This document shows positions 19,901 through 32,785 of a stretch of 64,000 nt of DNA, one piece after another; position 1 is the stretch's first letter, and the number at the start of each line of letters is the position of its first letter. The notes under the pieces were generated by a model. The model did not search any database. It saw only the letters and a list, made by a program, of their open reading frames with translations, and was not told the origin of the DNA. Origin of the DNA: Tubulanus polymorphus (taxonomy: Eukaryota > Animalia > Nemertea); the NCBI RefSeq assembly GCF_964204645.1, contig NC_134033.1, forward strand, positions 11,602,655 through 11,666,654. The letters run 5' to 3'. The translations under genes were made by a program, and so were the position numbers.

Positions 19901-22900
19901 TCCAGGTTTGGTACTAGTAACTCCAGTCTTCCACACTGTGATTAATGTCTTCGTGACAAGTTCTCGTCAATTCATTCGAATCATTCGCCTCAGTGTTTTA
20001 CTAATCATCAATTTCACTCAGATGGTGGTAGTAAACATTATCATCACTGGCAAATACTGTTACGAAAGGCCCGGGTTAATAGCATCACTGACCACCTCAA
20101 TTCTAAGACCAACTACACAAGCATTTTCAAAGATTGGATAAGAAAAACAAATTACCAATAAATCGACAAAATGCTGCATTAACTGTTGAATGTACGGTAA
20201 ACAGGTTTCTTTATACGTTCCTAGTAAAGCGTGCACCAAATCCGATATTTTACTTAGTATATATACATCCTCATCATCTTCATTTAACAAAGTTTCCTCT
20301 AATACATCATCGTAATCTTCATCCTTTCGTTGTTCTAGAAGAAATTAAGATGCCGTTCATGAATTTCATTAACATACTTAGTCGATTCATACAATTCCAT
20401 ACAGTATCTCCCCAGGACATGACCCCCGATGTCAGTATATCGCGCCATAGTTCCCACCAGTTAAACGGGATGGACCGTAAGATAACGATTACTATCTTAC
20501 CTTGTCTGTCAGCCTGTTTCTTGAAGTGATCCGTCATGAGCTTATCTATAACTTTGATCACATCGTTCATCCATTCATCGGTCAAACCTCCTTTACCCAT
20601 ATTCTCAATACACTGTTCAACAAAGAAAGAAACTGCCATTAAGTGAATGTTAACATATCTTGAATAGGCTAGAAGTAAGACTACAAGAATATCAGAATTT
20701 CACAACAAAATTGTGCCTTTGTTTGTCGGAAAGAAGTGCATATCAATTCGTATTTGAAGGGGTATTTGGAAGTTTGCGGGTCCAATGGAAGTCTAACGAG
20801 ACCTCTTCAGCATAAGTCATCCTCAAAATTAACTTCATGTTATAGCAATTGAGACCTGAACGATACATACCTTCGCTAGCGAATGCATAACTTCGCCGAG
20901 TATATCATTTTCCGGTTCTGATTCGACGGCTTTGATCAAACTCGGACAGATATAAAGCCACATTTCGGCGAGGTATTGTTCGCCTTTGATGCGAGCGCAT
21001 TCTATCAGATACGGCAGACTTTCAGCAGCAGCGATTCGCACCAGTAATCACCGGGCAGTTAAAGAAATAACCATACGATGAACGTTGCTTCGTGACATTA
21101 ATCACAAGTTGACAAGGTCGAGCTCAGAGTCAAACTCCGAAATTACCGTGAGTTAGTTCCCATTGCATTTTGGATATGTTGTATCAAAACAACTTCTTGA
21201 ATTTCGACCCAGTTCCTCGGTTATGAGGTCATATTCAAGGTCAAGTCACTGAAAAATAGCCTTTAGGGACTAGTTCTACCACTAGATGGCGCACTGAGCC
21301 CATTCTTTTCACTGCACAACTAGACCTAAGATTGTACCCAAGATTCATCAAGATTGACAGACTATTAACGAAGCTATTGCCAAGTAGCTGTTGACGCCGT
21401 CGGAAATAGGCAAATCATAAATTTGATCATCTGCTAAAAGGATATCATCGTGGAAGTAGAATTTAAGTAACGGCACCATCAATTTCACGACATCGCCCGT
21501 ATAATCGGCGAAGCCCTCTTTCAGTTCCCGCGCGTAACAAACTAACATCTGACAAGCCGTGGCCTTCTCGTCGAGACCAGCCGTTTTGATGCCGAATTTC
21601 TGTTGGTCGCCGAGCGTAACGAACTGCCAATCGGTGTCGTTCTCCATCGCTTTCACATCTTCCTCTGAAATCAGTAGAATGGGGAAAAAATTCATCGAAA
21701 TTTTGCTCATTTTCTCTCAGTATTTCTGAACTGCTAACAGCTAGCTGACTGACAAAATATTCAGTAACGATTCCAATGCCTATTTCCCTCCTAATGAGAA
21801 AATATCAGCTGTATATATCCAGTTGTTATAATTTCTTATTCTCAGTTACTACAAGGACCAACGCAGTTGATCCTAAAACCCCGGGGCCAGTTGCGCAGTT
21901 GTGGCTCGAGTCCAAAAGTGGTCGAAAACCTTAAGACTGGTCTTAAGTAGTAGAAGATTGGCTATACAACTAAGTTGGTCTTAGACTGGCCTTAGTCTAA
22001 GCCATGACTATGCAACTGGTCCCTGTTGATAAATTCCTTTAGAACAAAAATGTTTCCATCTACAAATGAGGACTGATGATGACTATACAAGTTGTGCTAA
22101 TCGAAACCAACTTACGATCGACTAAAGCAACTTCTGGTTTTGTGGATGCAGCTTTCATTACCGGACCCATGACTAGAGGCAGATATTGCGCGAACTCTTT
22201 GCCGAGTATTTTACACATTCGCGCCCAAGCGGAGATCATGTACGACGCTTGTGGGTCGTCTTCGGGCACGTCGGCTTCGTCCGTCTGTGTTTTCAGTAAA
22301 AGCTGCATTACCTGCAATGAACAATAAACGGGCGGTTCAGAATACTGCGAATTGGATATTGTGGGAGCCATCCCTTTTGGATACATTGAGAAAATGAATT
22401 TTACTAATTCCTTAATTTTTTACTTTTTTAACAGAATTTCCCGACCTTTCTAAAAAAAAGAAATCTCCCCGACTTGACCTCTAATTTCCAGGGACCAGTC
22501 TTTACTAAGCTCTAGAGCCAATCTAACAATTTAAGACCAGTCTTAAGATTTAAGCCCGCTTTTGGACTTAAGTCGCAACTGTGCAACTGGGCCCAGGTAA
22601 GTTGCCACCCTGATGAACTAAACTGCACGAAAATCCACGAGAGTCCTATTTTGAGGCTACTGTAAGAACTTACCTCGCTACAATCTTGCATGAATTTCTC
22701 TTTACCGACAGCGAGTCCGATCAAACTGATACATTCTATCGTTTTACCGCGTAGCAGACGCACGTCGTCGCCGGTGGCGTTCTGCACGATGTATTTCAAA
22801 CTTGGCATGAAACGATCGTAATAGTTGATGAACTTCTCTTCGGCCGTGTCGGCGACCGACGCCAGCGTCGTGACGAGTTGCTCCAATACCAGTTTACTGC

Positions 22901-25900
22901 CGCGTTGCAGAAGCTGAAAACGCACAAAAAAAAATTGTTGGTCATTCTCAACCAAACAGTGATTATTATTGTTACTTATCATTATACCCTTTTGGTGGTG
23001 TATAAATCGGTGATAGACTTTGCTAGTACATCGCATTAAGGTGTATTAATTAGTAATTAGTTTTTATCTCTATTATTGAAAGACACTTTTCAATAAGTGT
23101 CTTTCAATATTAGAAAGACACTTATTCTTCTAAAGCAGTAACTTAGTAACTAACAATACACCGCACCGTGGCGTAGACGCATTATAGCCGTTTGCTCATA
23201 ATACAACACACTGGCGTAGAATTTTTTTTCAGAATTTTCAAATCATCTCCAGGAATATCGGGGATTAATTCATCAACACTGAATAAAGGGTTAAAACCAT
23301 TGTTCTGTTTTCACACTAACCTCTTGTATTTTCAAGTTCAACACTTGTTCCAGTTTTGAGATGATGTTATCGAGATACGGTCCGAGGATATGCTTCGGAC
23401 AGTCCTCGCTGAAGTTGACAAGAGCGGCGGCCGCGTGGGCTTGAACGCGAGGATTAGCGTGATCGTCCATAACCGTCAATAATCCGACTACAACCTGAAA
23501 TATATGAAGTATCATCTCGATGAACTTCCTTTTCATTTCATACCATATTAATTTCTGTGAAAATTATACAGGTTTAACGTCGAGGATGTGAAGGTCCAAG
23601 GGGAAACGTATGTAAATCTGAAGATTTCAATATTCAATGCTCCCCGGTGAACAATTCAGTAGATCAATGACCATGAAACTCACTACAACATAGTAATGAG
23701 CTGATTGTGGTTACAGAATATGTAATAGAAATGCCACATTTATTCCCCTATTCACGCCCCCTGGTGAACAAACTTAAGAGAGGTCATGTTTCCTTCCAGC
23801 GCTTGCCGGGTATTCAGAATGTCGATAGTTCAATGTCTCCCACGATTTTACTTTTCTTCGGTTAAAATTTTTCGCCTCAGTCAAGAATCTTCTAATCAAA
23901 TCTACAGATCAGGAGTAGCTGATGGTCATCATAGGCAAAACGTGATAATACGATGGAACCTCGATACAACCTAAATTCAAGAGACTAGCTTATCCATTGA
24001 TAAGTAGACCTGGTAAAACTTAACACAGAAACAAGAGACATGTGTTTCCGAGTGTTTTCCTTAGTCAAAGTGTGTTAACAAGAAACATGGTTAAATAGTA
24101 ATATCACAGATAAATAGTAATACATTTAACTACAATGTACTGACTGGACAATGGAACTCAAAACATTCACTTGCATTGCCTCAGCATTTACTAATCATCA
24201 AACGTCAAAGTCAGATGGTGGTAGTAAAAATCTTTCATCACTGACAATACTGATACAAAACGACCAAAATCTACACTTCAAGAGTCTAGTACCATCACTG
24301 GTCCCCATTGAATAACCCTTGTTTACATTTCCTGTGGCGCTGACAGTTGTTCCGGTCCCCCAGAGTGTTTCTTTGTTATACATTTAATTTAACGAATGGT
24401 CCATGGACCACATAGTGACTTGATTGCCTCTCAGCATTTACTAATCATCACTATCAAATTCAGATGGTGGTAGTAAAAATCTTTCATCACTGGCAAAACA
24501 GATAAACCATGTTTACATTAGACACTTCAAGAGGCTATCGCCATCCCGGTTCCTACCCCCATTTAACAAGTGTTCAAAATCTCGATATTTTCACATTTCC
24601 CCCCTCGTTTGACGGACTTTTCATCAAATTTTTGCCTCAGTCTAAAAGTATTCTAATCAAATCTACTGATCAGGAGTAGCTGATGATCATCATAGGCAAA
24701 ATCATCAAAATCAAGTGGAACTTTGTTACAAAAATCTCCGTTGAGACCTCGAGAATCAATTTGTTATAAACAAGTAACCGATATGATCTAATTATATTTC
24801 CTCAATTCCGATGAAACCTTTCATCTTTGTTAGATGTATATCTGATAAATCGCCATATCGCAGTGCATCGTAATACGTACACTTATCGACAATGTACATG
24901 TACTGACTGGACAATGGAACTCATATTCACTTGCATTGCCTCAGCATCTACTAATCGTCATTCGTCAAATTCAGATGGTGGTAGTAAAAATCTTTCGTCA
25001 TCAGCAAAACTGATACAAAAAGACAGATATTTACACTTCAAGGAAAACCTCACTTCAATCAAAGAAATTGCCTCAGCACTTACTAATCATCAATTAATAT
25101 CAGATGGTGGTAGTAATATTTTTTCATCACAGGCAAATCTAATGTACATCCTGAAGATTCGTAGAGAAGCCGTTTTAACCCGGGATAAGTTGCTCAAAAC
25201 CGTAATAACAATGAGCTTTTAATTGTCGCTATGTTATTAAAGGCCGAGGAGTATGGATGCTAGTTAACCGGGTGGCAAACACTTGAGATCGGCCGTCCCA
25301 CTTTTACAGTATCTTGTTTAAAATGTTTAGAGTGAGCGAGGTTGGCTCACAACAGAAAAGCAGGTCACACAGAGTAAAATTTGACAAATTCATAAAAGTT
25401 TTCATATCAAGTTCTAAACTAATTTTAAATAATCTAGTCATAGCGGGAATGAAAATCTGATGCTAGCGATCTTTTTTTGTAGAGATAGGGCCAAGATTAA
25501 AAATTTTAGAGACATTTCAAATTTTTTGAAAATCATCAATTTTTATCCGATTTCGATGAAATTTGGACACAACATTGATGGTAGATAGCTAAACAAGTGT
25601 GAACTATGAATGAGGCTATGTTTTGTTTATGTATACTGATGACTATAGGTATCAAATTACTGTTAATGTGCTCTGTGAGCTACACTAATTCACTGGATAA
25701 CTCCTACCTCTATGTCATTCAAAGATTCAAATTTTGAAGGAAATACCAACTAAAAAGCTTAATTTCTTGTAGAGGAGGGCCTAAAACACATTTTTGACTG
25801 CAGAAATGAATATATTACACATTAATACATATGTCTGACAAAAAGGAGGGTCCAAATCGGATAACTGACAGAGAAAATAGGAGATTTCCAGTTTCAACCA

Positions 25901-28900
25901 TTGGAGCTCTCCACTGCACTATTGCTTCGTGGGTACTGCCATCTTTGACATTGATCGGGCTTTTATACTGCTCCTCGGCCTTTAACTCTAACCCTAACAT
26001 TTAAGCAACTTCTTCAATACATACATTTCAGTGTAATTAGTATAATCATCCATGGGCTGTTGAAATGATGTGCGAACTGAACTGATCGCGATTAAGATTG
26101 GCCCACCACAATTGTGCGAATAGTTTTCCTACCTGGGCGTGGAATTTCTTCTGGAAATTTGGCCCGAAATCCGTCGACATTTGTCCGAGAGCGTTACAAG
26201 CGGCGTAACGAACGCGTGGATGCTGAAAAAAATTACGGAATTAAATACAAAATCAGTCGAAAATTGAAAATTCTACAGCATTTCACTGTGTAACGAATGT
26301 ATAACTATATTGCATCTCCCAACAAAGTAGTGCAATGATTTATAAATAGTTCATTCAAATATCTTTAACTCAATACAGTCACATCTTCATCCACAACTGC
26401 CGAACTGGGTCTAAATGTTTACATCTTACCACATCTTTGAGGAACGGTATAACAGTGCCGACAATGTCGCCTAATATACCTTCCATTTGTTTGTGGCATC
26501 CCTCGCCGCAAGCCGATATCGCCATTAATCCAGCGTGGCGGTACCTCCAATCACCTGAAAATACGCATATTATTAGAATCAAATATCGGTTCAGGTCTGA
26601 GTTACGTACGACTGAACTTACAGCCACGTAACAGGGCTTACTAACGCTTCACTACTCACTGTGGCCTAACATGCTCGGTATATTTGCTGTTATATGCGGC
26701 AACATCGTTTTACCACCTAGACCACAAGCCAGTCGATCCAAAGCACTTTCACCGGTCATAGAATTACTACAAACAAAGCAAGATTGCAACAATTGAACTT
26801 CGGAAATTTCGAAATCTGGTATGGCAAATTCATCATTCACTACAGGGCAACTGTAACTCTACAGCGTAGTATAGATAATGATTTCTAACGGTAAAACGGG
26901 ACAGTTGCAAAGTCCTGACTGAGGTCCATAAGTGGTCTTAAATCTCATGACCTGGGCCAAGTTGTATAGTCGTGAAAGGCTAAAACTGGTCTTAAATCTT
27001 AAGACATGTCTACAAGGTTAAGAATTTAACTGTAGGATCTACAAGGAACTAAACAAAGAACTAAACCGTACCTATCGTTGTCTTCCTCTTCAACCTCATC
27101 CGACAACGACCATTCCGGATCATCTTCAAGGTCGACCATAAACGCTAAAATTTCCGGCACTGAAAATAATGATAAAAATATTCCGACGGTTTTCTAATGC
27201 ACTGCGATTTATCATTACAAGAATTGAGACAATGTCAGTTAATTTTCGAATAATCTGCCTCAGTGAATGTTAAATTCTAATCAATGTAGATATCAGGAGT
27301 AGCTGATAGTCATCATTAGCAGATTTATAAATAAGAGATTTTGCTTATCATTTAATCGAGAGCCATAAATCAGTCGTTGAATCCTCTTGAGAAAATTCTA
27401 TAATCAATTTTTCTCTATTTACCTAATTGAGAAATGAATTGTCCTTTTTTTCGAATCATGGCCGGTGCTGTCTCTGACATGGTAACGATCACTTCTAACG
27501 CTAGATGGCGCAAACTGTCGTCGAGGGAGGAGTTGGACACAACCTTCGGATAAATGAGAAATATGAGCAGATATTGATGATAATGTGAAACAGACATTGG
27601 GTTTATGACAAGTTTTAAGTTCTTAACATCTTCAGCACTTTTGAGAATTAATAAGCCAGCAGTGAGAGGGTTAAACGTCAATAGGAACTTCTTAGCCACT
27701 GATGGAGATGCAATAAATATGCATCATGAAGAATATTTCATTAAACGACGTCAACATTATTATAACAAATTAATCGAAGTACCTTCATACACAGTGTGAT
27801 CACGCTTTCTAAATGGGGACGCAAGAATTTGGGAACTGTTTCAGCGAGCTCAACGAGGCATTGCAGCAATGAATTTTCTTCAGTCTGCGCGACATTTTGT
27901 TCGACAATCTGCAAAAAGTAACCAATAGTTATTAGACCAGAGATTTGAGTGTAATTTTTTCGTAAAACTGGACCCATGAGTCCGTTCAACTGGTCAGAAT
28001 TAGATTTAACTCATTTAACTGTGTTTAAATCTGTTCATTTCCGATGTTATCGAAATAAACCCAGACCTGCGGGGACAGGAAGGAAGGTTCTTATGTGACA
28101 ACGAATTCCATTTTCCATACGCCGCTTACACTACCTTCCAACTGGTTACTTCGTCGATGTACGCTAGACTTTATTATAGCGATATAACATACTTACAGCG
28201 AGGATAGTCGGCACGAAGTCTTTAAAACTAGCGAGAACGTGTTTATCATCTTCGTTGGCCAACATGAACGCAGAGACGGTTCGTACGGCCTCGAAACGCA
28301 CGTTAATCGAGTTCTGATCCAATAAACAACTGTACAACATCTGTTTGATGACCTCGAGATTTTGCGATTGTTGATTACCGAATACGCTCGGGATAGCGCT
28401 GTAACGAATAGAGATAATAGTGTAGGGTTCTTACTGATCAGGATGTCCAAAAAACCCCAATCATTGTTGCCACTTCTGCAGAGTTTCCTGATTTTTCCAA
28501 GTCATAACACAAAATACTGCAAGTGAATATGCTGCAGGTGAATGGAGAAATTCCCCGAATGAATCTGCGGCAAGTGAATGGAGAAATTCCCCGAATGAAT
28601 CTGTGGCAAGTGAATAGAGAAATTCCCCGAATGAATCTGTGGCAGGTGAATGGAGAAATTCCCCGAATGAATCTGTGGCAAGTGAGAATAAGAGAAATTC
28701 CCTGAATGAATCTGTGGCAGGTGAATAGAGAAATTCCCTGAATGAATCTGCAGCAGGTGAATGGAGAAATTCTTAGGTTTAAGTGTTCAAATCAATTCAT
28801 TGTCATTCAGGAATCCATTCACATTTCGATGAAGATACAGCATACGGTGAAAAATAGCGTAGTTAACTTACCCAAATATGTGCAGCGCGCTTTCGCGGAG

Positions 28901-31463: not shown

Positions 31464-32785
31464 CAGCGACTAGATCACAGACGCCGTCGTCGATGACATC
31501 ATATCAAACCAATTCAAATCTTCTTCGGCAGGGTTCAGATCTTCAGATCGTGCGCACGTCAAGCGAGGCGAAAGCAATGGCGAAGGTCGCTAGGGCAAAA
31601 TGTTATGTACCGTGTTCAGGGGGCCCGAACGCGCCATCCTCCTTTTTCAGTAGAGTGGTGCCCTTTTTGAAAATTGAAGAAGATAAAATCTAATTTGACC
31701 AGCCCGCGGGGCAAGATTTGAAACGTGCCTACTCAGCCCTTGCCGACTCAATCAATGACCGAATGAACCAATGATGAATGTGTAGCCTATCGATAGTTGA
31801 TTTCATGGCCTACCGTTGGAAGATTCCTCAGTTTATCAGAAAACTTTGAAAGTTTCCTAGTTTCCATAGCTCGCTGACGAGATACGGTACTCAAAAGGAT
31901 TTTTACTTCTTGAAAAATCCGGGGGGGTTTCGCCGGTTTTCCTCACAGCGGGGAAATTGTGCATAGCAAAAAAAAAAACTTTTTACAAATCGATACCATT
32001 TCGACATGACACGATTAATCGCATCACTTTCATCCTTTTTGATGAAAATGATCAACTTTTTTCGTTTCCAGTGGCACCACATTAACATTTTAAGTTTTGT
32101 CCTAGGAAACGTTTCACGTTCACTAGGCTCAATTCAGTGGGGAAGGATACTGTACTAAATAGAATGAAATTCGTTGCTATTTTGAGGAGGATTTGGCTGC
32201 CTGCTTTTACTGAAGTGTGCGATTGGAACACAGAGATCTACGTCTAATAAATTTTTAGTTCAAAGAGTGGGAACAGCAACTATAAAGCTTGACCAAAACT
32301 GCGACTTGTTTTTTGTTTTCCGACACTTAGTGTTCCGGGAGAAGTGTCCTTCTGCGCGGCGGCCTGGTCGTCTTCCCGGCCACTGAGAATACTTCAGTCA
32401 ACTCGGTCAGGACGGGCCTCCCCTTTGGTTGAAGCAGAAAAACCTAAAGGTAGGGACACACGAGCCCCTACCTTAACATATGAGGAATTCAATATTGCTC
32501 TCTGTGAAGTACGAGAAAGTCCTTATTATTTACATCTACCCACCGCCGGACCAGTCTCTCACGGGCGCCAACAAAAGAACGTCAATAAATTTAATTTATT
32601 CCATTGTTTCACCCTATTCCGTATTTTAGTTAATGGTCGGTTCCATATTTTATTGTTTATCTTTTAATATTACAGCGCTGTGTAAACAAATTTGTCAATT
32701 TTTGTCAAAGGCGTCAATTTTCTATTTCCGGGTTTGCGGAGCAGTTTTTTCTATTTCTTGCCTTCGAAGGTTACCCGTGAAAAAC

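What the first reader, a model, noticed from the sequence alone, without database searches (positions are those of the whole stretch)
23871..25136. Six box C/D snoRNA-like units packed in one IPO5 intron, built by duplication of a B-A-A cassette
Seen: intron 11 (23495-26132) contains, sense to IPO5, units B1 (23871), A2 (24176), A3 (24424), B2 (24631), A4 (24936) and A5 (25068). B1->B2 and A2->A4 are both 760 nt apart and their flanks are alignable (e.g. TACTGACTGGACAATGGAACTCA). Boxes, terminal stems and guides are conserved while spacers diverge, which suggests selection on the RNA. Established: vertebrate C/D snoRNAs usually occur one per intron and are released by debranching and exonucleolytic trimming; polycistronic clusters need endonucleolytic cleavage, as in plants and yeast. 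Inference: a polycistronic intronic C/D cluster in an animal, implying endonucleolytic or alternative-splicing-based release.
Basis: partly seen in the sequence, partly recalled or inferred. Interest (0 to 1): 0.8.

Follow-up and report, generated by a model that had tools for sequence, protein, structure and literature searches.

The report
Six snoRNA genes in one intron
One intron of this invertebrate's importin-5 gene carries six well-kept genes for two types of small guide RNA that should direct methylation of two conserved spots in large-subunit ribosomal RNA; several per intron is unusual for an animal, but the layout is known from plants and flies and recurs in this genome.

Summary
Six canonical box C/D units lie on the minus strand at the stated coordinates. 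All sit inside one 2638-nt intron (23495-26132) of an importin-5 orthologue, sense to the gene, in the transcript order A5-A4-B2-A3-A2-B1.

An RNA contig shows that the intron is removed in one piece. Two more copies sit alone in other introns of the same gene: A1 at 19987-20053 and B0 at 27254-27323. Genome-wide model searches found no A or B copy outside this gene.

Boxes and D' guides are almost invariant among copies, while loops and D guides vary (p about 1e-7). The A guide fits 28S at the equivalent of yeast U1442, which is not methylated in Arabidopsis. The B guide fits the site equivalent to Arabidopsis 25S Am945.

The B-A part of the proposed cassette duplication holds. The A3/A5 part does not.

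No small-RNA data exist, so release of all six RNAs, and endonucleolytic cleavage between them, remain inferences. Release by alternative or recursive splicing has no support.

Earlier notes of this scan report similar intronic C/D arrays on other DNA of this genome, and I partly verified one. I rate this a new member of a known kind, of moderate interest.

The parts
23495..26132 (-). Host intron of the importin-5 gene (2638 nt; GT at 26132-26131, AG at 23496-23495) holding the six-unit array
   Evidence: Sequence. RNA contig X2 record 9 joins 26133 to 23494 and skips 2638 nt.
25068..25136 (-). A5, box C/D unit, first in the transcript; 996 nt from the 5' splice site
   Evidence: model R1 96 bits
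24936..25007 (-). A4, box C/D unit. Read in register, its C and C' boxes are UGACGA; a perfect UGAUGA lies 3 nt upstream. It is 60 nt after A5.
   Evidence: R1 95.9 bits
24631..24700 (-). B2, box C/D unit, 235 nt after A4
   Evidence: model R2 101.5 bits
24424..24496 (-). A3, box C/D unit (2-nt insertion between box D and the stem), 134 nt after B2
   Evidence: R1 98.2 bits
24176..24247 (-). A2, box C/D unit, 176 nt after A3
   Evidence: R1 102 bits
23871..23940 (-). B1, box C/D unit, 235 nt after A2 and 376 nt before the 3' splice site
   Evidence: R2 100.4 bits
19987..20053 (-). A1, fifth A copy, alone in a 334-nt downstream intron (20155-19822), 165 nt from its 3' splice site
   Evidence: R1 82.8 bits
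27254..27323 (-). B0, third B copy, alone in a 263-nt upstream intron (27422-27160), 94 nt from its 3' splice site. Its terminal stem carries two compensatory changes.
   Evidence: R2 92.4 bits
26133..26222 (-). Importin-5 exon upstream of the host intron
   Evidence: Joints 26222/26430 and 23492/26131 in the RNA contig
23321..23494 (-). Importin-5 exon downstream of the host intron
   Evidence: Joints 22913/23321 and 23492/26131; ORF translation
25140..26070 (.). Repeated element filling the 5' third of the intron; not part of the snoRNA array
   Evidence: Summed contig depth is 1100-2100 in the DNA-like run X1, against about 25 for single-copy sequence.

Best explanation
The stretch is a cluster of six functional box C/D snoRNA genes of two paralogous families, A and B, in one intron of the importin-5 gene. 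It arose by local tandem duplication from single-copy intronic ancestors of the kind still seen as A1 and B0 in two other introns of the gene.

[quoted passage not shown] By the D'+5 rule, family A should direct 2'-O-methylation of the U in UGGU*GG of 28S rRNA. That is LSU nt 1822 here and corresponds to yeast U1442, five nt after the U24 site C1437. Family B should direct methylation of the A in UAGUA*GC. That is LSU nt 1241 and is the site equivalent to Arabidopsis 25S Am945, which SnoR12/Z44 guides there.

Shown:
- the anatomy of the units;
- the constraint pattern among copies;
- the fit of both guides to rRNA;
- restriction of both families to this one gene;
- removal of the intron in one piece.

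Inferred: the units are transcribed with the host pre-mRNA and each assembles into a snoRNP. After splicing and debranching, or directly on the pre-mRNA, an endonuclease cuts the 60-235-nt spacers, and exonucleases then trim each piece back to its snoRNP. Exonucleases alone could free only the outer ends of the array.
For: Anatomy and chance control:
- Boxes, stems and unit sizes of 67-73 nt.
- 10 minus-strand candidates, 8 of them these units, against 2.1 per shuffled window.
- All units are recognised as C/D-like by many Rfam models, though below threshold.

Selection:
- In family A, 2 of 33 columns in the boxes and D' guide vary, against 21 of 30 in the other internal segments (Fisher p 1.5e-7).
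- In family B the figures are 0 of 31 against 16 of 29 (p 4.5e-7).
- The invariant guide block ends exactly where the rRNA duplex ends.
- In the B terminal stem 21 of 21 cells pair, with two compensatory pairs.

Targets:
- The A guide gives 11 Watson-Crick pairs plus 1 G.U, and the B guide 9 plus 1 G.U.
- Both targets lie in invariant stretches of the Rfam eukaryotic LSU consensus.
- The A site is anchored by this genome's own U24, a SNORD24 match at 41.8 bits whose D guide points to the C five nt upstream. Yeast U24 guides C1437 (PMC8053127).
- The context of the B site is identical to Arabidopsis 25S nt 938-954 around Am945 (supplementary table).

Copy number and host:
- BLAST and covariance-model searches of the whole genome find 5 A and 3 B copies, all in this gene and all sense to it.
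- Two exon translations match human importin-5 at E 5e-37 and 8e-33.
- The intron is spliced as one unit.
Against: No small-RNA or total-RNA library of this organism was available. No mature 70-nt RNA, no processing intermediate and no methylation has been seen.

The B duplex is short, at 10 bp with one G.U. The A site is not a known methylated position in Arabidopsis or, as far as I recall, in yeast or human.

No Rfam family reaches its threshold. A4 has altered C and C' boxes and may be decaying.

Folding the units with their flanks shows no structure better than shuffles (z from -0.6 to +1.4). There is therefore no visible RNase III-type cleavage signal in the spacers.

The genome searches score only the best candidates, so the copy counts are lower bounds.
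Confidence: 0.8

Rival explanations
1. Only part of the array matures. Exonucleases stop at the outermost snoRNPs, so the intron yields mainly a sno-lncRNA-like molecule bounded by A5 and B1, or one or two snoRNAs per transcript. The inner copies would then be redundant or on the way to decay.
For: In mammals, introns with two snoRNAs give sno-lncRNAs because trimming is purely exonucleolytic (PMC10557570). No cleavage-signal structure is seen in the spacers. A4 has altered C and C' boxes.
Against: The inner copies A4, B2, A3 and A2 keep their boxes and their D' guide as strictly as the outer ones, which is not expected of useless copies. Similar multi-copy introns recur in this genome (partly checked), which suggests that the organism can use them. 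The available RNA contigs cannot detect non-polyadenylated species.
Confidence: 0.12
2. The units are transcribed independently from their own promoters inside the intron, so no cleavage of a polycistronic precursor is needed.
For: A short upstream motif (CTTGAAGTGT, 35-45 nt before the unit) is shared by A2, A3 and A4.
Against: The motif is missing upstream of A5, A1, B0, B1 and B2, so it is better explained by shared descent of the A2/A3/A4 duplicon. All 8 copies are intronic and sense to the host. B0 sits 94 nt from its 3' splice site, a position that I recall as typical of splicing-dependent snoRNAs.
Confidence: 0.04
3. Release is by alternative or recursive splicing, which divides the intron into sub-introns with one snoRNA each, as in the SNORD115/116 host genes.
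For: One GTAAGT lies inside the D guide of A5.
Against: The only spliced contig joins 26133 directly to 23494. The intron has no AG|GTRA ratchet site. Between A5 and B1 there is no polypyrimidine-AG 3' splice-site-like motif, and the only two lie in the repeat at 25835-25865. The duplicated blocks contain no exon-like conserved segment with splice signals.
Confidence: 0.02
4. The units are non-functional relics, either snoRNA-like repeats or pseudogenes, that merely look like C/D snoRNAs.
For: No Rfam family reaches its threshold, and there are no expression data.
Against: Variation is strongly partitioned, with boxes and D' guides invariant and the rest variable. The stem shows compensatory changes. 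The guides match invariant rRNA segments in the correct register. There are only 8 copies, all in one gene.
Confidence: 0.02

Closest known systems
Intronic snoRNA gene clusters of rice (Liang et al. 2002, Nucleic Acids Res 30:3262; listed among the references of PMC3089462)
   Same: Several snoRNA genes, sense to the host, lie in a single intron of a protein-coding gene and are built by local duplication. The presumed route is excision from the intron followed by cutting between the units.
   Different: That case is in plants. Here the host is an animal importin-5 gene. I did not read the rice paper, and processing has not been examined here.
[quoted passage not shown] 2004, J Mol Biol 341:669; cited in PMC5932544 and PMC3089462)
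   Same: An animal precedent for many snoRNAs in one intron.
   Different: The fly clusters are H/ACA. Fly C/D snoRNAs are reported to follow one snoRNA per intron (PMC3089462). Here the cluster is C/D.
Mammalian sno-lncRNA introns (two C/D snoRNAs in one intron, as in the SNORD116 region; PMC10557570)
   Same: More than one C/D snoRNA lies in one excised intron, and the same question arises of what happens to the sequence between them.
   Different: The mammalian cases depend on alternative splicing of an array that is otherwise one snoRNA per intron, and they yield a long RNA capped by snoRNPs. Here six units lie in a constitutive intron, and the product is unknown.
Arabidopsis SnoR12/Z44, guide for 25S Am945 (PMC8053127)
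   Same: Family B is predicted to methylate the same nucleotide, in an identical 17-nt rRNA context.
   Different: Sequence relatedness beyond the guide was not shown, and no Rfam match of that kind appeared. It is unknown whether the site is methylated in any animal.
U24 / SNORD24 (yeast C1437, A1449, G1450)
   Same: Family A binds the same rRNA helix. Its duplex overlaps that of the U24 D guide, and its target lies 5 nt after the U24 C site.
   Different: The guide register and the target differ (U1442 equivalent). A5 scores only 21.9 bits against SNORD24, whose threshold is 41. A separate U24 match just above the threshold lies on another contig.
SNORD115/SNORD116-type tandem arrays
   Same: Tandemly duplicated C/D snoRNA units lie in a host transcript.
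   Different: As I recall, those arrays repeat an exon with every unit, giving one snoRNA per intron. Here there are no internal exons.

Membership tests
Box C/D snoRNA (2'-O-methylation guide) | Box C (RUGAUGA) near the 5' end and box D (CUGA) near the 3' end | tested here: met
   All 8 units have both boxes. A4 meets the rule only through a UGAUGA shifted by 3 nt; in register it reads UGACGA.
Box C/D snoRNA (2'-O-methylation guide) | A short terminal stem that brings boxes C and D together | tested here: met
   Stems are 4-7 bp in every unit. In family B, 21 of 21 cells pair, with 2 compensatory pairs, while slid controls pair in 43-62% of cells. With only 3 sequences, the shuffle control is not significant (60 of 500).
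Box C/D snoRNA (2'-O-methylation guide) | Internal C' and D' boxes | tested here: met
   D' is CUGA in all units. C' is UGAUGA in A1, A2, A3 and A5, UGACGA in A4, and UGAUUA in family B.
Box C/D snoRNA (2'-O-methylation guide) | At least 10 nt of complementarity to rRNA or snRNA ending next to box D or D', which places a target nucleotide opposite position 5 | tested here: met
   The A guide gives 12 bp (11 Watson-Crick plus G.U) on 28S, and the B guide 10 bp (9 plus G.U) on 28S, both starting at position 2. The D guides have no conserved target. snRNAs of this genome were not searched.
Box C/D snoRNA (2'-O-methylation guide) | A stable 60-100-nt RNA bound by fibrillarin, Nop56, Nop58 and 15.5K, with the target actually methylated | not testable with these tools
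   No small-RNA run was found. Contigs of one mRNA-type run show only the spliced mRNA and thin intron coverage.
Any curated Rfam snoRNA family | A score at or above the family's gathering threshold | tested here: not met
   The best scores are snoR21 at 33.0 (threshold 45) and snoR53Y at 32.9 (threshold 43). The aligned guides differ from those of the matched families.
U24 / SNORD24 | Guides for the equivalents of yeast C1437 and A1449/G1450, and a match to the Rfam model | tested here: not met
   The A guide points to the U 5 nt after the C site. A5 scores 21.9 bits against a threshold of 41. A U24 match with the canonical D guide lies at G000:C7:106345-106428.
Plant SnoR12/Z44 | Guides methylation of the A in CUAGUA*GCUGG (Arabidopsis 25S A945) | tested here: met
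   The predicted B target has the same nucleotide and context as Arabidopsis rows 938-954.
Plant SnoR12/Z44 | Sequence homology of the snoRNA body | not tested
   No SnoR12 sequence or model was at hand, and no such Rfam match appeared at E up to 10.
Intronic snoRNA gene cluster | Two or more snoRNA genes in a single intron, on the host's sense strand | tested here: met
   Six units lie in intron 23495-26132. The intron is validated by the spliced contig.
Intronic snoRNA gene cluster | All members are processed from the host intron rather than from their own promoters | not testable with these tools
   There are no RNA-end data. All 8 copies share the host's orientation and all are intronic.
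SNORD115/116-type array (one snoRNA per intron of a repeated exon-intron unit) | An exon between successive snoRNA copies | tested here: not met
   The flanking exons are joined directly, and no splice-site-like signals lie between the units.
sno-lncRNA | Accumulation of a long RNA bounded by two snoRNPs | not testable with these tools
   The precondition, two or more snoRNAs in one intron, is met. No non-polyadenylated RNA data are available.

The most novel reading that the evidence does not exclude
This invertebrate routinely matures many box C/D snoRNAs from single spliced introns. That would require an endonucleolytic, plant- or yeast-like step that cuts between tandem snoRNPs, a step not described for C/D snoRNAs in animals. 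The importin-5 intron is one instance: six genes, including a guide for a 28S position (yeast U1442 equivalent) that is not methylated in the model organisms checked. It could serve as a compact substrate for finding that nuclease.
Probability: 0.4. Interest if true: 0.55.

Novelty: new member of a known kind. Interest (0 to 1): 0.4.

Why it matters
The textbook rule for animals is one C/D snoRNA per intron, freed by debranching and exonucleolytic trimming. That route cannot free the inner members of an array.

This intron holds six conserved C/D genes, and the same genome appears to have further arrays of this kind. Together they suggest that the rule is a lineage habit rather than a constraint of animal snoRNA biogenesis. 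They also suggest that at least one spiralian lineage has a way to cut between snoRNPs.

The locus is small, at 1.27 kb, and the copies can be told apart by single-base differences, so it would be a practical reporter for that step.

The locus also shows a gene outside the translation apparatus serving as the only host found for two rRNA guide families. It predicts one methylation site that is not methylated in Arabidopsis and, as far as I recall, not in yeast.

None of this is a new kind of system.

Tried and rejected
- Rfam at gathering thresholds found only a tRNA in the window. With permissive E-values all units hit many C/D families, but below threshold and with different guides, so no family assignment was possible.
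- BLAST with B1 missed the diverged copy B0. B0 was found by a box-plus-stem scan and confirmed with a covariance model.
- The weak genome hit of model R1 on contig C4 (28.8 bits) has no boxes and was discarded.
- I first tried to place the target sites in yeast and human numbering from memory, using U18 as the anchor. That gave inconsistent offsets and was dropped. The placement now rests on this genome's own U24 and on the Arabidopsis table. Human numbers were not verified.
- Folding each unit with about 40 nt of flank gave no structure better than shuffles. The hairpin between box D plus the stem and the conserved downstream flank of A2 and A4 is not significant, and I do not claim it as a signal.
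- The scan for recursive or internal splice signals was negative.
- The search for RNA runs found no run on record as RNA. One run (X2) turned out to hold a spliced mRNA contig. Its thin intron contigs (depth 2-11, against 465 for the exons) say nothing about mature snoRNAs.
- Polymorphisms listed for X1 to X3 spare the boxes, D' guides and stems. The list is truncated and the count is too small to be a test.
- Paper searches found no study of nemertean or spiralian snoRNA organisation and no genome note to verify the species named in an earlier scan note. The species identity is therefore unverified.
- No cross-species comparison was possible, because the genome has no relatives in the genome tool.
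- The exons were searched one by one by reference. 
Full report
**What is there**

The plus strand of 23871-25136 reads as the reverse complement of six units of 67-73 nt. On the minus strand each unit has the following parts:
- a 5' stem half;
- UGAUGA (box C);
- a 13-20-nt spacer ending in CUGA (D');
- a 9-10-nt loop;
- UGAUGA (family A) or UGAUUA (family B) as C';
- a 10-13-nt spacer;
- CUGA (box D);
- a 3' stem half.

The order in the transcript is A5, A4, B2, A3, A2, B1. The spacers between them are 60, 235, 134, 176 and 235 nt. The array starts 996 nt after the 5' splice site and ends 376 nt before the 3' splice site.

A plain scan for UGAUGA, then CUGA 45-115 nt later, plus a terminal stem of at least 4 bp, found 10 candidates on the minus strand of the whole window. 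Eight of them are A/B units. Shuffled windows gave 2.1 over both strands, with a maximum of 6. Rfam recognises every unit as C/D-like with dozens of models, but none reaches its threshold and the aligned guides differ.

**The host**

Two exon translations, searched separately by reference, match human importin-5 at E 5e-37 (residues 499-579) and 8e-33 (residues 646-716). I built no joined coding sequence.

Of three public runs that hold this DNA, X2 contains a 2574-nt spliced contig. It joins the importin-5 exons and skips exactly 2638 nt between 23494 and 26133, with GT..AG on the minus strand. The six units therefore share one intron that is removed in one piece, sense to the gene. X1 has even depth of about 25 across exons and introns and looks like DNA.

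The 5' third of the intron (about 25140-26070) is a repeated element, with depth of 1100-2100 in X1.

**More copies, all in this gene**

BLAST of the whole assembly found a fifth A copy, A1 (19987-20053). It lies alone in a 334-nt intron. The box scan found a third, more diverged B copy, B0 (27254-27323). It lies alone in a 263-nt intron, 94 nt from the 3' splice site.

Covariance models built from the A and B alignments found 5 A and 3 B copies in the 268-Mb assembly, and none outside this gene. The one weak outside hit has no boxes. Only the best candidates are scored, so these counts are lower bounds.

**Evidence for selection**

Among the five A copies, 2 of 33 columns in the boxes and D' guide vary, and both changes are in A4. 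In the remaining internal segments 21 of 30 columns vary (Fisher p 1.5e-7). Among the three B copies the figures are 0 of 31 against 16 of 29 (p 4.5e-7).

The D guides differ between copies, so only the D' guide is constrained.

The B terminal stem pairs in 21 of 21 cells. It has two compensatory changes in B0 (U-A to C-G, and U-A to A-U), while slid controls pair in 43-62% of cells. With three sequences this is suggestive rather than significant.

A and B cross-hit each other's models at 16-24 bits and share the stem and the C' region, so they are probably old paralogues.

**Targets**

I took the rDNA from the same assembly.

The invariant A block UUACUACCACCAU pairs from position 2 with UGGUGGUAGUA(G) of 28S, giving 11 Watson-Crick pairs and one G.U. 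Position 5 falls on the second U of UGGU*GG (LSU nt 1822).

The invariant B block AUCAGCUACUC pairs with AGUAGCUGGU, giving 9 Watson-Crick pairs and one G.U. Position 5 falls on the A of UAGUA*GC (LSU nt 1241).

In both families, variation among copies begins exactly where the duplex ends. That agreement is independent of how the duplex was found. Both sites lie in stretches that are upper-case (invariant) in the Rfam eukaryotic LSU consensus.

*Placing the A site.* The genome has a SNORD24 match just above threshold on another contig. Its D guide points to the C five nt upstream of the A site. Yeast U24 guides C1437 with its D guide (PMC8053127). The A site therefore corresponds to yeast U1442 and Arabidopsis U1452. 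That position is absent from the Arabidopsis list of 111 Nm sites.

*Placing the B site.* The Arabidopsis per-nucleotide table reads ...AUCUAGUA(945, Nm)GCUGGUUCC. This is the same nucleotide in the same context, and SnoR12/Z44 guides it there.

**How the array arose**

The two halves share two homologous blocks at a fixed offset of 760 +/- 3 nt. One block is A2/A4 with about 60 nt downstream and 40 nt upstream of flank (units 88% identical, flanks 70-80%). The other is B1/B2 with about 90 nt of downstream flank (89% and 63%).

About 130 nt between the two blocks shows no similarity at any offset tested, although its length is the same. I cannot explain equal length without similarity.

A3 carries diverged versions of the A2/A4 flanks. 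A5 does not, and the A-A spacers differ (176 against 60 nt). The history is therefore a duplication of an A-B segment plus separate A duplications, not a clean triple cassette.

**Release**

This part is inference. Reviews describe intronic snoRNAs as freed by splicing, debranching and exonucleolytic trimming. Polycistronic yeast precursors need Rnt1 cuts between units, and mammalian introns with two snoRNAs give sno-lncRNAs (PMC10557570).

With six snoRNPs on one intron, exonucleases alone would stop at A5 and B1. The inner units are as strictly conserved as the outer ones, so I think cuts in the spacers are the most likely route.

Nothing in the sequence identifies the cut sites. Folding of the units with their flanks is no better than shuffles.

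Release through sub-introns is unsupported. The flanking exons are joined directly. The intron has no AG|GTRA site and no strong 3' splice-site-like motif between the units.

Independent promoters are unlikely. All eight copies are intronic and sense, and the one shared upstream motif is confined to the A2/A3/A4 duplicon.

**Context and novelty**

Several snoRNAs per intron are described for rice and for Drosophila H/ACA snoRNAs. Drosophila and silkworm C/D snoRNAs are reported as one per intron (PMC3089462, PMC5932544). I found no paper on snoRNA organisation in nemerteans or other spiralians.

Earlier notes of this scan report similar C/D arrays in other genes of this genome (PSMD3, RPS18, EF1-beta, RPL8, PRRC2, DDX6), and one of them names the species as a ribbon worm. 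I checked one of these. The stretch 3.3 Mb downstream on the same contig does hold six tandem copies of another C/D-like unit and further C/D candidates. I did not confirm that it is RPL8, and I could not verify the species name.

The locus is therefore a real and well-preserved example of a layout that is unusual for animals but known elsewhere. It carries one predicted new methylation site and one site shared with plants.

Noticed in passing
window 21894-22092 and 22491-22689: Two intronic stretches of the importin-5 gene have summed contig depths of 38,000-100,000 in a DNA-like run whose single-copy depth is about 25. They belong to a very high-copy short repeat (thousands of copies), with an opposite-strand joint between the two places.
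   Followed up: no
window 25140-26070: The 5' third of the host intron is a moderately repeated element (depth 1100-2100 against about 25). It accounts for most of the intron's length outside the snoRNA array.
   Followed up: partly
window 11708-11779 (+): A tRNA gene (Rfam 55.4 bits). The anticodon loop reads as AGG, so it is probably tRNA-Pro.
   Followed up: no
window 25078-25083 (A5, D guide): The D guide of A5 contains GTAAGT, a 5' splice-site-like hexamer. Public runs carry an A>G variant at 25078 that changes it, and a 1-nt deletion at 25119. Both lie in unconstrained parts of A5.
   Followed up: partly
window 23955-24085 against 24715-24845: The middle of the A-B spacer has the same length in both halves of the array but no detectable similarity at any offset tested, while the blocks on both sides are 63-89% identical. 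This is unexplained.
   Followed up: partly
window 28500-28710: A tandem repeat with a 36-nt period, seen as a repeated 12-residue peptide in ORFs on both strands, lies in an upstream intron of the same gene.
   Followed up: no
L027 (G000:C7:106345-106428, +): A U24/SNORD24 match (41.8 bits, just above the 41-bit threshold). Its D guide fits the equivalent of yeast 25S C1437, and its D' guide fits the A1449/G1450 region.
   Followed up: partly
L015 and L016 (G000:C5:3407495-3407566 and 3405596-3405667, +): Two SNORD18-like C/D units lie 1.9 kb apart (40.9 and 39 bits, just under the 41-bit threshold). They are probably U18 copies in neighbouring introns.
   Followed up: no
L014 (G000:C12:3555102-3555174, -): A SNORD38-like unit (35 bits) whose D' guide fits GGUAAGCAGAACUGG of 28S. 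The D' box reads CUGC.
   Followed up: partly
L017 1765-3240 (G000:C9, about 3.3 Mb beyond the window): Six tandem copies of a 96-nt repeat read on the minus strand as a C/D-like unit with a variant C box. Two further C/D candidates lie 139 nt apart. This supports the earlier scan note of an intronic array there.
   Followed up: partly
window 31971-32077 (-): A weak U6atac-like match (19.7 bits, threshold 33). It is probably noise.
   Followed up: no
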